From NCBI GenBank assembly GCA_002269645.1, contig NIVC01001135.1, positions 248,001 to 312,000 of the forward strand: a stretch of 64,000 nt of DNA, written 5' to 3'. Under the pieces are notes generated by a model that worked only from the letters and a program-made list of their open reading frames with translations, was not told the origin of the DNA and made no database searches. The DNA comes from Macrostomum lignano. Taxonomy: Eukaryota. Both the position numbers and the translations under genes were made by a program. Shown one piece after another: positions 3,160 to 7,041 of this stretch (the first letter of the stretch is position 1; each line of letters starts with the position of its first letter).

Positions 3160-6100
3160 ATGCTCAATCACAGATCTGGCGTTTCAGCAGCCCCCTGTAC
3201 ATCGGCAAGTCAGACGGCAGTTCAGGAAAAGTACATCTCCAAGCGCGAATACTACTGGCGCGTGAGTTCTACAGTTGCCATGGCAATAGTTGGAGTGGCA
3301 GCCTGTCTTTTCACTGTTCAGCTCATCCAGGACCTGCTCCAGGCGACTAGGTATCCCGTGCGGTCGGTGAAACATCGGCCAGTGGATCGCTATGACGCTC
3401 CAGGTGAGAATAACGACAAACATTACACAGTTTACCTGTATTAGTAGTAGTAGCAGTAGTAGTAGTAGTAGTAGTAGTAGTAGTAGTAGTAGTAGTAGTA
3501 GTAGTAGTAGTAGTAGTAGTAGTAGTAGTAGTAGTAGTAGTAGTAGTAGTAGTAGTAGTAGTAGTAGTAGTAGTAGTAGTAGTAGTAGTAGTAGTAGTAG
3601 TAGTAGTAGTAGTAGTAGTAGTAGTAGTAGTAGTAGTAGTAGTAGTAGTAGTAGTAGTAGTAGTAGTAGTAGTAGTAGTAGTAGTAGTAGTAGTAGTAGT
3701 AGTAGTAGTAGTAGTAGTAGTAGTAGTAGTAGTAGTAGTAGTAGTAGTAGTAGTAGTAGTAGTAGTAGTAGTAGTAGTAGTAGTAGTAGTAGTAGTAGTA
3801 GTAGTAGTAGTAGTAGTAGCATCAGTATCGATGTAATCATGTATTACCTGGTGATTCTACTCCTGACTCATGTGAACGTGCTGCTCCAACAGGAGCATAA
3901 AACACAAGCCAAATAAGAAAGCAGAATATCCACGATCCACTGTCGGCAGTCAGTTGCTATGCAACTTGCCCTGGATGCTAATTATTCAGCCCATTTCCCA
4001 CGAGACGGAACTTTCTCCTTCATCATATTTCATTGGAATTTTCTTTTCCTAGCATGCGCTGCATTCCGCTGTCAACACTTCAGGCATCGCGGTGTTTCCC
4101 AACGGGCCTAGACTGCAGTCCTGCAGCTACTACCGGCTCCTCAGCGCTGAATTCTGGAGTGCGTGAGTCCCCCGGTGCACTTTCGGTACTACAGACCGAA
4201 AGTTTGCCCAGTCTGTAACTCGAGAGAAGCTCGAAATTGAAAAAACCGGCCGATTTTTAGACCACGCGACGCAGTGGAATCTGAACCGGACAGACTGCGA
4301 CTACCGCAGCCTGACCTACAGAGACGCTGCGGACAACCAGACTGACGAGTTTGCTGGACACGACGCACTTGTGTTCATGGGCCCCTCCAGAGTCAAGGAG
4401 AAGGAGACGCTGTTCCTCTACTTTACGGCTGACACAAGCGATGATCAGGATTTCTACTCGCTGGGGTTTCTGCTGTTCCATGACTACTGGGCCTTCAGCA
4501 ATCGGTGTGCACCCATCGGATGACTAAACCCGAACCCCGAGATAAGGGTGCATTTGGGGCTTGTGAACGAAAATTGGCCAGCGAGTTTTCGTGCGATTCC
4601 CACCCAAGAGGGCCGATTCCCAAATCACAGAGTGTACATGTCTGACGACTAGAAAGTCAGGACCGCTGTACACCCTGTGTAAGCGTTGCGTATGAGTGCG
4701 TGCTTGTACCGGTATGTGCTCAGGAGTTAGCGGAATAGGCAGATTCAGCGATCGCTGTGGGTCAACTCCCAAAAGATGAGGCATTTGACCGACCTCCAGT
4801 CAGAAAGTTCCAATCTCGGTACCGCTACCGAAAGACACGAACATACATTCACAAAGCGAGAGACTCGCAAACGCAAACTACAGATAGGCCCAAATTTTGT
4901 GACACCTGAACTGCGTCTGCAGGTCACAGGCCGACCGGCTGGAGTTCGTAGCCGACATCCGCAGCCACCAGCCCATGTACGCGGCGTCTGCCGGGCTGCG
5001 CATGTGGAACCGGCTCAGCATGACCCACATGGAGCTGGAGGGCGGCCACGAGCCCACTCAGGTGGTGCTGGACTTGGAGGTGAGCCCACGAAACTGCCTA
5101 TTTACTGAGCTATTGTAGAAAAAAAATTAGCAAGTCACAGACCGGGACAATTGACTGAAAACAACAACGAACAAACAACAGAATACGCTGTCAGTTAGTT
5201 CCTAAAGAGAGCAGCCTCACCTCTAGGCCTGGAGGCGCCGACACTGACTTCAGCCAGCCGACGCTAGCTATTTTTGGTCTGCTTGTCAAAAAAACGCCGA
5301 GTGCACGCCTGCCCCTTGCCGGTAGGATTCCTGCAGGTTGGCAGAGTTAACCGTCCAAAAAGTTCTTGGACACCCTTCCTATCTCTGCATCTGTTCAAGC
5401 GATTTTTATAAAAAAATACACAAACATGGACCTATATGTAATGAATTCAGTGCTAACATTTCAGCTTAATCGGGTTGACAGAGCGAAAGCAATCGATCAT
5501 TTACTGAGGAACGTATAAAATTAGCAATACGATTTTTGAAGAGCATCGAACCTGGACTCCAGTGGTGACATTGCAGCTCATTTTTCAGAAAAATTAATCA
5601 GCAAAATATCACTGCTTTCTCTGAGTATTGATTAATACCTTAATTGATTTAATACTAATGCAAGCTGTGAGGGTTTAGCCATAGATTAAAGAGCAAAAAA
5701 GAACAGAGCAGTAAGCAGCATAGCCAGATTCAGATGCTGAGACGCGGAACCAGCCTCAGGTGGTTTAAGAGCAAAAGAATCGCCGATACGAAGTCTGCTT
5801 GCAACAAAGGGCGGCAGTTTCAGCTCTGGGAGACGAGTTCAAGAGCAGATTCAGCACGCAGGATGAGTCCAAGAGGCCAGCGGTTTTCCAGCTTCCCCGA
5901 GCTGAAAGCGGCTGCTGAGGGGCTGATCAGAGCGACACCTACGCCGATGTGGTCGGCGTGGATTGAGGATGAGTTGCTGATGCGATATGACAAGTGCATT
6001 CGACGGAATGAAGATTCTTCTGAAGATTTTCACGATTGGTGATCTGTTTTTGAAGTTCTGGAACTTGTCAGTTTGAACTGTTTGCTCGTTAACTTTTACA

Positions 6101-7041
6101 TTTTGTTGAGTTTAAAATCGTATTGCTAATTTCGTAGGTTCTTCAGTAAATGATCGATTGCTTTTGCTCTGTCAACCCGATTAAGCTGAAACTTTAGCAC
6201 TGAATTCATTACATATAGGTCCATGTTTGTGTAACATTCCATATAAATCGATTAAACAGATGCAGAGATAGGAGGGGTGTCTAAGAACTTTTTGGACGCA
6301 CTAGGTACGAGCGTACCAGACTTAATAAACAAATCTGTCTTAAACTGGTTCCTATTAGAAGCTTCTCAATGTCGTACTCGCAGTCTCTACTCTTTAGACA
6401 TGTGAGAGCAGTGGCGTTTACGCTTTTGCCACCTCTTAAACGTGGCATCCACCGGCCTAGGAGATGTGGGTAGGGGTGCCAACCAAGAAACAGGGCGCCG
6501 ACCTAGACACCAAGTATTGGCGCCCTTTGGCTGTGGCCGACTCCAATTAGAATTTCTGTCTATTCAACTACAAGTGTATTAGTACGCAACACTCTTCCAA
6601 ACTCCACTTGAGATTCGTTTCACATTCTTTACTTGCTACTATTTAGTAGGCGATCTCCAATAACATGTGCAGAGAAGTTTCCCTGATGACCTCTATTTAT
6701 ACCTTTCCCCGTCCGTCGCGGGCCATCAGTACAGCCTGGTGTGGCACTGGGACCGCCATCAGTCCGATGCTAGCAGCCGGAAGCAGTTCTTTCTGTTCTT
6801 CGAATGGAAAAGCGGCATCGTGGCGGAGTCCTACATCATGCGCACGCAGTCGGTATGGAGCTTCGGGGCCGCGCTGTGCGGAGTCCTGCTGACGCTGCAC
6901 AAAGGCTACAGCCTGGCGGCTGGCAACATTCGGGAGCTCCGACGAACTCGAGCCAGGCGGACTCGCAGCCGGCAGCTCAAACGACTGTGGCAGCAGCACC
7001 AGCGGGACCTGCGGCTGCAGAAGGGCGCCGTCAATAGGTGA
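3160..7041 (+). CDS. PACC1: Proton-activated chloride channel PAC/TMEM206 homolog, 5 exons, ~343 aa
   Basis: join(3160..3403,4084..4158,4261..4504,4923..5079,6730..7041); all introns GT-AG and phase-consistent (alternative exon-5 acceptor at 6673). Translation gives TM1, YPVRSVKHRPVDRYDAPG|IAVFP..LQSC, DC..Y, ALVFMGPSRVKEKETLFLYF, SAGLRMWNRLS, QFFLFFEWK, W..G..LCG.LL.L.K (TM2) and a basic tail. This is colinear with recalled human PAC (HPVMSVSYKEVDRYDAPGIALYP, ALIVQGPREVKKRELVFLQF, SGGFRTWVKMS, QLFFVVFEWK, LCGAFLALFK). The start codon is the first in-frame ATG and is tentative. Confidence 0.9.
3442..3819. repeat. (AGT)n microsatellite in PAC intron 1
   Basis: ~125 nearly perfect AGT units; source of the poly-S and poly-L ORFs. 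Confidence 0.98.
5349..6303 (+). mobile_element. Internally deleted mariner-like element with ~185-bp TIRs, in PAC intron 4
   Basis: 5351-5536 (CGTCCAAAAAGTTCTTGGACACC...TTAGCAATACGATTTT) is the imperfect reverse complement of 6114-6299. The interior 5860-6040 encodes GQRFSSFPELKAAAEGLI...LLMRYDKCIRRNEDSSE, resembling a mariner transposase C-terminus. Confidence 0.85.

What the first reader, a model, noticed from the sequence alone, without database searches (positions are those of the whole stretch)
3160..7041. Full-length PAC/TMEM206 proton-activated chloride channel homolog in an apparently invertebrate genome
Seen: five phase-consistent exons, none obvious from the ORF track alone, encode a ~343-aa two-TM protein colinear end to end with human PAC (350 aa), including the DRYDAPG signature and both ectodomain Cys. 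Known: PAC was characterised as a vertebrate channel with no Drosophila or C. elegans counterpart, and only distant invertebrate relatives have been mentioned. Inferred: an intact homolog in a probable flatworm points to an older origin and an uncharacterised acid-sensing or endosomal Cl- pathway in this lineage.
Basis: partly seen in the sequence, partly recalled or inferred. Interest (0 to 1): 0.8.

Follow-up and report, generated by a model that had tools for sequence, protein, structure and literature searches.

The report
Flatworm PAC/TMEM206 chloride channel gene
The window holds an intact five-exon flatworm (Macrostomum) gene of the PAC/TMEM206 proton-activated chloride channel family; papers call this family vertebrate-restricted, but public databases already list relatives in flatworm, nemertean, annelid, acorn worm and sponge.

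Summary
Five GT-AG exons (3160-3403, 4084-4158, 4261-4504, 4923-5079, 6730-7041, + strand) splice into a 343-aa open frame. It matches Pfam TMEM206 (E 1.5e-39) and solved PAC structures (E ~1e-34) along nearly its whole length. A predicted structure hits only PAC/ASOR chains first; ASIC comes far behind.

All four introns lie at the same alignment columns and phases as in a nemertean gene. Three are shared with an acorn worm and a fish. The contig is from a macrostomid flatworm, probably Macrostomum lignano, not a vertebrate.

The "older origin" inference is right but not new to databases. NCBI or UniProt already label homologs in M. lignano, Tubulanus, Ridgeia, Ptychodera and the sponge Amphimedon. 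This gene itself sits in UniRef inside a chimeric transposase-PAC model. Only the papers I found still say invertebrates lack it.

Function is inferred. The pore lysine (K319 equivalent), the Cys pair, E181 and D269 are kept. All three vertebrate proton-sensor histidines (H98, H130, H131) are tyrosines here, so acid gating of the vertebrate kind is not assured.

Verdict: a real new member of a known family, of moderate interest.

The parts
3160..3403 (+). Exon 1. It holds the ATG, a 36-aa cytoplasmic N-terminus, TM1 (about residues 35-58), the TM1-ectodomain linker with Y65 (human H98 position), and DRYDAP plus the first base of the Gly codon.
   Evidence: hydropathy peak 32-44 with a 19-residue window. 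The donor is GTGAGA. Intron phase 1 falls at the same column as in Tubulanus, Ptychodera and Trematomus.
4084..4158 (+). Exon 2 (75 nt). It encodes GIAVFPNGPRLQSCSYYRLLSAEFW, with C95 (human C128) and Y97/Y98 (human H130/H131).
   Evidence: The Tubulanus exon 2 is also 75 nt, with the same flanking intron phases.
4261..4504 (+). Exon 3. It encodes ectodomain finger and palm strands, C119 (human C149), sequons N115 and N132, and E155 (human E181).
   Evidence: The acceptor at 4261 is favoured by colinearity with all homologs. An in-frame alternative acceptor at 4195 is used by the database model P0186.
4923..5079 (+). Exon 4. It encodes the ectodomain thumb and palm, the ASAGLRMW motif and E227 (human E250).
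   Evidence: The flanking introns (phase 2 and phase 0) are conserved in all four species compared.
6730..7041 (+). Exon 5. It encodes D248 (human D269), the FFEWK strand, TM2 with G291 and K298 (human G312 and K319), a basic C-terminal tail, and the TGA stop at 7039-7041.
   Evidence: It is 67% identical to M. lignano P0001 over this exon.
3438..3819 (.). (GTA)127 microsatellite inside intron 1.
5352..6298 (.). Foldback, transposon-like insertion inside intron 4: 185-nt inverted arms at 5352-5536 and 6114-6298, 91% complementary.
   Evidence: The inner ORF 5734-6042 has no Pfam hit.
4195..4260 (+). Optional 66-nt in-frame extension of exon 3, used in the public chimeric model. It is probably intronic.
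   Evidence: The 21 aa it adds are absent from all aligned homologs and have pLDDT of about 50 in the model.

Best explanation
This is an intact, vertically inherited flatworm member of the PAC/TMEM206 channel family.

Shown: a 343-aa protein with two transmembrane helices and a beta-rich ectodomain of the PAC fold.

Inferred from the solved vertebrate channels: it assembles as a homotrimer whose TM2 helices line the pore. The conserved TM2 lysine (K298, human K319) makes the pore anion-selective.

My best guess for gating (about 0.5) is opening by acid on the extracellular or luminal face, releasing Cl- from acidifying endocytic compartments as in mammals. It would have to use other titratable residues, such as D248 (human D269), E227 and E240 and the several other ectodomain histidines. 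The three vertebrate sensor histidines are tyrosines here. Y97 probably keeps the structural hydrogen bond to E155 that H130-E181 provides in human PAC.

The confidence of 0.85 is for the identity claim (an intact PAC-family gene encoding a PAC-fold channel subunit). Acid gating on its own is about 0.5.
For: - Family: Pfam TMEM206 E 1.5e-39 over profile positions 22-290 of 296. phmmer against PDB returns only PAC chains, E 3.5e-34 to 5e-27.
- Fold: AlphaFold2 model with mean pLDDT 75 and pTM 0.63. The Foldseek top 20 are all PAC/ASOR, E 7e-22 to 2e-17, target-normalised TM-score 0.58-0.80 (0.73-0.80 for all but four, three of which are listed as low-pH or desensitized/activated states). ASIC follows at E about 1e-5 with TM-score about 0.3.
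- Gene structure: the four introns coincide in column and phase with all four Tubulanus introns. Three coincide with Ptychodera and fish introns.
- Phylogeny: in the NJ tree the window protein joins M. lignano in 100 of 100 bootstraps, inside a spiralian clade also at 100 of 100, separate from the deuterostome and sponge clades.
- Residues kept: C95/C119, E155, D248, G291 and K298. K319 as the selectivity determinant, and H130-E181 as essential for assembly, come from PMC9351481.
- Composition: codon GC3 is like the neighbouring host genes.
Against: - No transcript or junction evidence could be obtained. No near-identical protein from a transcriptome turned up.
- H98, H130 and H131 are Tyr, E107 is Pro, D289 is Ser and E257 is Gln.
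- In human PAC, H130A and H130E are dead, and the double and triple His-to-Gln mutants fail to assemble or reach the surface.
- The only invertebrate PAC ever tested (Saccoglossus) stayed in the ER and gave no current in HEK cells.
- Trimer formation and any current are inferred, not shown.
Confidence: 0.85

Rival explanations
1. It is a genuine PAC-family anion channel that is not proton-gated in the vertebrate way. It could be constitutively active, tuned to a very different pH, or opened by another stimulus, because the histidine sensors are a deuterostome and nemertean acquisition.
For: - Window residues Y65, Y97 and Y98 replace H98, H130 and H131.
- Across 30 family members, position 130 is Tyr in 15 and His in 7. 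Position 98 is Asn in 18 and His in 6.
- In human PAC these histidines jointly set pH50, and the triple His-to-Arg mutant conducts at neutral pH.
Against: - Single H98Q, H98A, H130Q and H131Q mutants of human PAC remain acid-activated, so the histidines are not the only sensors.
- D269, another sensor, is kept as D248, as are E250 and E261.
- The ectodomain has seven other histidines, plus H250 in the beta12-TM2 segment.
Confidence: 0.3
2. The true product is the 743-aa transposase-PAC fusion held in UniRef (P0186), or the isoform with the 21-aa insert from acceptor 4195.
For: A public gene model joins the DDE_3 transposase ORF (81 to about 791) to the PAC exons, uses acceptor 4195, and skips the stop through a donor at 7038. 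Acceptor 4195 has the better polypyrimidine tract.
Against: - The 21 aa are absent from every homolog and are modelled with pLDDT of about 50.
- M. lignano P0001 starts exactly at the 4261-type exon boundary.
- Homolog N-termini are short, and homologs end near the window's stop.
- Fusion of a transposase ORF more than 2 kb upstream is typical of ab initio over-merging (my judgement).
Confidence: 0.1
3. It is a decaying or unexpressed gene copy (pseudogene) in a repeat-rich polyploid genome.
For: Introns are invaded by a microsatellite and a foldback element. No transcript-derived match was found. A second, 44%-identical Macrostomum sequence exists.
Against: There are no frame disruptions over 1032 nt, and all splice sites are canonical. 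The family-invariant residues C128, C149 and G312 are intact, as is K319 (K or R in all 30 members). GC3 is 0.75 against intron GC of 0.38-0.51.
Confidence: 0.06
4. The contig is a vertebrate or other contaminant, or the gene came by horizontal transfer.
For: None found.
Against: - Identity to fish and hemichordate PAC is only 24%.
- The nearest relative is M. lignano.
- The neighbouring Kv gene has flatworm best hits.
- The tree follows the species phylogeny, and the introns are ancestral.
Confidence: 0.01

Closest known systems
Vertebrate PAC / ASOR / TMEM206 (PACC1), e.g. human 7jna, Xenopus 8h8f, bovine 9hqn
   Same: - Colinear over TM1, ectodomain and TM2.
- Same fold (target-normalised TM-score up to 0.80).
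- The Cys128-Cys149 pair, E181, D269, G312 and K319 are kept.
- Three intron positions are shared.
   Different: - About 24-28% identity.
- H98, H130 and H131 are Tyr; E107 is Pro; D289 is Ser.
- The N-terminus is shorter (36 aa), and I saw no motif resembling the N-terminal tyrosine-based endocytic signal reported for mammalian PAC (that motif is from my own memory, not checked here).
- The C-tail is longer and Arg/Gln-rich.
Macrostomum lignano UniProt A0A1I8GFN0 'Proton-activated chloride channel' (P0001, a 249-aa fragment)
   Same: Nearest relative (100 of 100 bootstraps). It is 67% identical over exon 5, including an identical LCGVLLTLHKGYSLAAGN TM2 stretch. It shares the exon 3 start and the exon 4/5 junction.
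   Different: Only 40-42% identical over exons 3-4. It carries a 34-residue Arg-rich insertion shortly after the exon 4/5 junction and lacks exons 1-2. It is either a paralog in the same genome or the ortholog in a sister species.
Tubulanus polymorphus XP_074645017.1 (nemertean) and Ridgeia piscesae KAK2173466.1 (annelid) PAC-like proteins
   Same: Same spiralian clade. Tubulanus has an identical four-intron structure, including the 75-nt exon 2. They share the LHKGY TM2 motif (LHRGF in Ridgeia) and YS(V/L)V after intron 4.
   Different: 35% identity to Tubulanus. Tubulanus keeps H98 and H130; the window has Tyr at both.
ASIC / DEG / ENaC channels
   Same: Two-TM trimeric architecture with a hand-like ectodomain. 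This is a known structural resemblance of PAC.
   Different: There is no Pfam ASC hit. Foldseek gives E about 1e-5, TM-score about 0.3 and 6-9% identity. The pore lysine predicts anion rather than cation selectivity.

Membership tests
PAC / TMEM206 (Pfam PF15122) | Sequence match above the curated family threshold over most of the profile | tested here: met
   136.4 bits against a cut-off of 27, profile positions 22-290 of 296. Only PAC chains are hit in the PDB, at E about 1e-34.
PAC / TMEM206 (Pfam PF15122) | Two transmembrane helices flanking a large beta-rich ectodomain with the PAC fold | tested here: met
   Hydropathy peak for TM1. The AF2 model has long terminal helices and 13 strands between them. 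The Foldseek top 20 are all PAC/ASOR, with target-normalised TM-score up to 0.80. TM2 is amphipathic and did not pass a simple hydropathy cut-off.
PAC / TMEM206 (Pfam PF15122) | Conserved ectodomain cysteine pair (human C128 and C149) | tested here: met
   Window C95 and C119. Both columns are invariant wherever a residue is present, in 28 and 30 of 30 sequences.
PAC / TMEM206 (Pfam PF15122) | TM2 lysine that sets anion selectivity (human K319) and the TM2 glycine (G312) | tested here: met
   Window K298 and G291. The family has K in 26 and R in 4 of 30, and G in 29 of 30. The role of K319 is from PMC9351481.
PAC / TMEM206 (Pfam PF15122) | Proton-sensor histidines H98, H130 and H131 of the vertebrate channel | tested here: not met
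   Window Y65, Y97 and Y98. These define vertebrate pH tuning, not family membership, because most non-vertebrate members lack them.
PAC / TMEM206 (Pfam PF15122) | E181 partner of residue 130, and the sensor D269 | tested here: met
   Window E155 and D248.
PAC / TMEM206 (Pfam PF15122) | Shared gene structure with recognised orthologs | tested here: met
   Introns at alignment columns 122 (phase 1), 230 (phase 2) and 283 (phase 0) are shared with fish, hemichordate and nemertean. Column 149 (phase 1) is shared with the nemertean.
PAC / TMEM206 (Pfam PF15122) | Homotrimeric assembly | not testable with these tools
   Only single-chain prediction is available.
PAC / TMEM206 (Pfam PF15122) | Acid-activated, outwardly rectifying Cl- current | not testable with these tools
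   This needs electrophysiology. The one invertebrate ortholog tested in the literature was ER-retained.
ASIC / DEG / ENaC | Sequence match to the amiloride-sensitive channel family and its larger ectodomain | tested here: not met
   No Pfam family other than TMEM206 appears at E up to 1. Structural hits come only at E about 1e-5 and TM-score about 0.3.

The most novel reading that the evidence does not exclude
The flatworm protein is a natural 'no-histidine' PAC. It would then either sense protons through a different residue set or not be proton-gated at all.

If the window is M. lignano itself, the species carries two PAC paralogs only 44% identical, and these could form heterotrimers. Vertebrate PAC is described as a single gene without paralogs. 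Acid gating would then be a lineage-specific elaboration of an older metazoan anion channel that is also present in sponges.
Probability: 0.25. Interest if true: 0.6.

Novelty: new member of a known kind. Interest (0 to 1): 0.4.

Why it matters
Papers up to 2025 state that PAC has no invertebrate homologs, or only a hemichordate one. The sequence data here contradict that. The family spans sponges, spiralians and deuterostomes, with conserved introns, so it is probably ancestral to animals. Its reported absence from flies and nematodes (not tested here) would then be a loss.

Macrostomum is a transgenic, RNAi-amenable flatworm, so it could give an in vivo invertebrate model for PAC function. 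The natural His-to-Tyr replacements at all three vertebrate sensor positions offer a ready-made test of which residues really confer proton gating.

The practical gain is smaller. The report corrects a chimeric public gene model to a clean 343-aa protein.

Tried and rejected
- **Restricted tools.** I worked around this with P0001 for the exhaustive search, and with a substring of the window-encoded model P0186 for the structure. The modelled chain therefore carries the 21-aa insert.
- **Exon-fragment profile.** An alignment of exon fragments with P0001 (A1) was badly spread by MAFFT and was discarded.
- **Exact look-ups.** Look-ups of the window Kv ORF, P0001, P0139, P0125 and P0186 found no contig. 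The source record of the window could therefore not be named directly.
- **First word-index search.** It missed the vertebrate PACs and P0186, so its single hit says nothing about how widely the family is distributed.
- **Exon 2 donor.** A donor at 4161 was rejected because it is CG, not GT. A donor at 4162 was rejected because it breaks the frame. The donor after 4158 (GTGCGT) was kept.
- **Exon 5 acceptor.** Acceptors at 6673 and 6763 keep the frame, but they add or remove residues relative to all homologs.
- **Literature.** A six-term search was too loose to be useful. Yang et al. 2019 (PMC7305803) is not held.
- **Not examined.** I did not test for absence of the family in arthropods or nematodes. 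I did not examine a trafficking motif beyond reading the N-terminus.
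Full report
**What is in the sequence**

Reading 2800-7400 on the + strand and enumerating splice combinations gives one model with canonical GT-AG introns throughout.

| Exon | Coordinates | Length |
|---|---|---|
| 1 | 3160-3403 | 244 nt |
| 2 | 4084-4158 | 75 nt |
| 3 | 4261-4504 | 244 nt |
| 4 | 4923-5079 | 157 nt |
| 5 | 6730-7041 | 312 nt, TGA at 7039-7041 |

- The spliced CDS is 1032 nt and encodes 343 aa with no internal stop.
- The ATG at 3160 is the first in frame after an upstream stop and has A at position -3.
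- Exons have GC3 of 0.75 and introns have GC of 0.38-0.51. Neighbouring coding ORFs in the window show the same GC3-rich usage: Kv 0.89, TTL exon 0.80, WSC ORF 0.64.
- tblastn of the protein back on the window finds only this one copy.

**What it is**

- hmmscan against Pfam returns a single family, TMEM206 (PF15122). The E-value is 1.5e-39 and the score 136 bits against a cut-off of 27. The match covers profile positions 22-290 of 296.
- phmmer against all PDB chains returns only proton-activated chloride channel entries (bovine 9hqn, Xenopus 8h8d, human 7jna and others), at E 3.5e-34 to 5e-27. Query residues 42-321 align to chain residues 76-342 of 350.
- For the structure I used a substring of P0186, a database model encoded by this window, plus 17 homologs. 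The AlphaFold2 model has mean pLDDT 75.4 and pTM 0.63. It shows two long terminal helices and a beta-rich domain between them.
- Foldseek against the PDB ranks 20 PAC/ASOR chains first (E 7e-22 to 2e-17). Target-normalised TM-score is 0.73-0.80 for 16 of them. It is 0.58-0.63 for four human chains, three of which are listed as low-pH or desensitized/activated states. ASIC and related DEG/ENaC chains follow only at E about 1e-5, TM-score about 0.3 and 6-9% identity.

**Independent support from gene structure**

I recovered the genomic loci of three annotated family members: nemertean Tubulanus polymorphus (L002), hemichordate Ptychodera flava (L004) and fish Trematomus bernacchii (L003). I reconstructed their exact exon chains.

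On a joint protein alignment the four window introns fall at columns 122 (phase 1), 149 (phase 1), 230 (phase 2) and 283 (phase 0).

- The four Tubulanus introns fall at exactly the same columns and phases, and exon 2 is 75 nt in both.
- Columns 122, 230 and 283 are also intron positions, with the same phases, in Ptychodera and in the fish.

This validates the exon model without RNA data. It also argues for vertical descent from a common bilaterian gene.

**Whose genome it is**

- The window carries an intronless Shaker-type Kv ORF (47285-48874, - strand, 529 aa; Pfam BTB_2 and Ion_trans). Its best named hit is Macrostomum lignano, at 73% identity over 100% of the query. The best unnamed hit is a Logan contig at 79%. 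Trematodes, a nemertean and molluscs follow.
- The only hit of the first PAC search was M. lignano UniProt A0A1I8GFN0 (P0001), a 249-aa fragment, 44% identical.
- In a neighbour-joining tree of 30 family members, the window protein and P0001 pair in 100 of 100 bootstraps.
- The profile search also returned P0186. This is a 743-aa protein that the window itself encodes, and it is held in UniRef and MetaClust but not in NCBI. The M. lignano proteins P0001, P0008 and P0090 show the same source signature.

I infer that the window is from a macrostomid flatworm, most probably M. lignano itself. In that case P0001 is a divergent paralog. This last step is inference, because the record name could not be retrieved. 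The contig is certainly not vertebrate: identity to fish and hemichordate PAC is 24%.

**How widespread the family is, and what was already known**

An exhaustive phmmer search of P0001 against 1.84 billion cluster representatives found only 39 clusters at E up to 1e-3. Source names, where present, are listed below.

| Organism | Group | Accession | Name given by the source |
|---|---|---|---|
| Tubulanus polymorphus | Nemertea | XP_074645017.1 | proton-activated chloride channel-like |
| Ridgeia piscesae | Annelida | KAK2173466.1 | Proton-activated chloride channel (UniProt name) |
| Ptychodera flava | Hemichordata | XP_070558143.1 / XP_070558144.1 | proton-activated chloride channel-like |
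| Amphimedon queenslandica | Porifera | XP_011409656.2 | transmembrane protein 206-like |
| several vertebrates | Chordata | various | proton-activated chloride channel / TMEM206 |

A large set of unnamed ENA, JGI and Logan sequences clusters with the sponge protein. The tree has three groups (sponge-like, deuterostome, spiralian), which matches the species phylogeny.

The literature I could search says otherwise.

- Ullrich et al. [quoted passage not shown] - The two papers that mention both TMEM206 and Amphimedon are, by their titles and abstracts, about progesterone receptor genes and tweety genes, not PAC; I did not open them.

It is already visible in automated database annotation. What is missing is a written account.

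**The public model of this gene is chimeric**

P0186 makes four choices that differ from my model.

- It joins a DDE_3 mariner-like transposase ORF (window 81 to about 791, running off the left edge; Pfam) to the PAC exons through an acceptor at 3174.
- It uses an alternative in-frame acceptor at 4195 for exon 3, which adds the 21 aa RKFAQSVTREKLEIEKTGRFL.
- It skips the TGA stop through a donor at 7038, joining an exon near 7387.

The 21-aa insert is absent from every homolog in the alignment and is modelled at pLDDT of about 50. P0001 begins exactly at the 4261-type boundary. I therefore prefer the 343-aa model. I cannot exclude the 4195 isoform without transcript data.

**How it most likely works**

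By homology with the solved vertebrate channels, the protein should form a trimer. TM2 should line the pore, and a TM2 lysine should confer anion selectivity (PMC9351481).

Residue mapping (HMMER alignment, MAFFT alignments, human numbering):

| Human residue | Window residue | Kept? |
|---|---|---|
| C128 / C149 | C95 / C119 | yes |
| E181 | E155 | yes |
| E250 | E227 | yes |
| E261 | E240 | yes |
| D269 | D248 | yes |
| W304 | W283 | yes |
| G312 | G291 | yes |
| K319 | K298 | yes |
| H98 | Y65 | no |
| H130 | Y97 | no |
| H131 | Y98 | no |
| E107 | P74 | no |
| E257 | Q234 | no |
| D289 | S268 | no |

In human PAC, H98, H130, H131 and D269 are the identified pH sensors. H130 must hydrogen-bond E181 for folding and assembly, and H130A and H130E are dead. 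The double and triple His-to-Gln mutants do not assemble or reach the surface. The triple His-to-Arg mutant conducts at neutral pH.

Across the 30 aligned family members, Tyr is the commonest residue at position 130 (15 of 30), paired with E or Q at position 181. Asn is the commonest at position 98 (18 of 30). The histidines are confined to vertebrates, the hemichordate (H130), the nemertean and a few unnamed sequences. A Tyr-Glu hydrogen bond can plausibly replace His-Glu structurally (my inference).

- The channel architecture and anion selectivity are well supported by inference.
- Proton gating of the vertebrate type is only a guess, at about 0.5.
- An endosomal role is extrapolated from mammals.
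- The only invertebrate ortholog ever expressed (Saccoglossus) was retained in the ER and gave no current.

**Verdict**

The finding is real and correctly read. It is a new, cleanly modelled member of a known family, in a phylum where the databases already list one. It is of moderate interest for two reasons: the published view of PAC as vertebrate-restricted is out of date, and this protein naturally lacks the vertebrate sensor histidines. It is not a new kind of system.

Noticed in passing
window 81-824 (+), continuing beyond the left edge; joined to 3174 in model P0186: A mariner-like DDE_3 transposase ORF (Pfam E 2.5e-10). A public UniRef/MetaClust gene model fuses it to the PAC exons. That model also skips the PAC stop through a donor at 7038, joining an exon near 7387.
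   Followed up: partly
window 3438-3819: A perfect (GTA)127 microsatellite fills more than half of intron 1.
   Followed up: no
window 5352-5536 and 6114-6298: 185-nt inverted arms (91% complementary) flank 577 nt inside intron 4: a foldback or MITE-like insertion. The inner ORF 5734-6042 has no Pfam hit.
   Followed up: partly
window 7050-7231, 7485-7819, 8065-9098, 9661-11137, 11687-11997: A run of minisatellites starts 9 nt after the PAC stop: 14/28-nt, GT-rich 31-nt, 15-nt with 69 copies, and 22-nt with 67 copies. Many more tandem arrays appear as repetitive ORFs along the window.
   Followed up: no
window 47285-48874 (-): An intronless 529-aa Shaker-type Kv channel ORF (BTB_2 and Ion_trans). 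No identical protein is on record. The nearest are an unnamed Logan contig (79%) and M. lignano (73% full length; 85% over 67% of the query for an unnamed UniParc entry).
   Followed up: partly
window 12486-13214 (-) and 62701-63156 (-): A tubulin-tyrosine-ligase family exon (Pfam E 3.9e-14), and a secreted-looking ORF with a WSC domain (E 9.7e-14).
   Followed up: no
P0210 / P0184 cluster and the unnamed ENA/JGI/Logan proteins P0147-P0158 and P0179-P0194: A large TMEM206 clade groups with the Amphimedon queenslandica protein XP_011409656.2. Most members come from metagenome assemblies and are presumably sponge hosts. Many have long coiled-coil-like K/E/R-rich C-terminal tails that vertebrate PAC lacks.
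   Followed up: partly
P0001 (M. lignano A0A1I8GFN0), residues about 143-176: An Arg-rich 34-residue insertion lies shortly after the conserved exon 4/5 junction. It is absent from all other members and may be retained intron sequence in that gene model.
   Followed up: no
L003 (Trematomus) and L004 (Ptychodera) against the window: The fish gene has extra introns at alignment columns 46, 182 and 319 that the invertebrate genes lack. The fish and the hemichordate share an N-terminal phase-0 intron (column 12) that is absent from the two spiralian genes.
   Followed up: no
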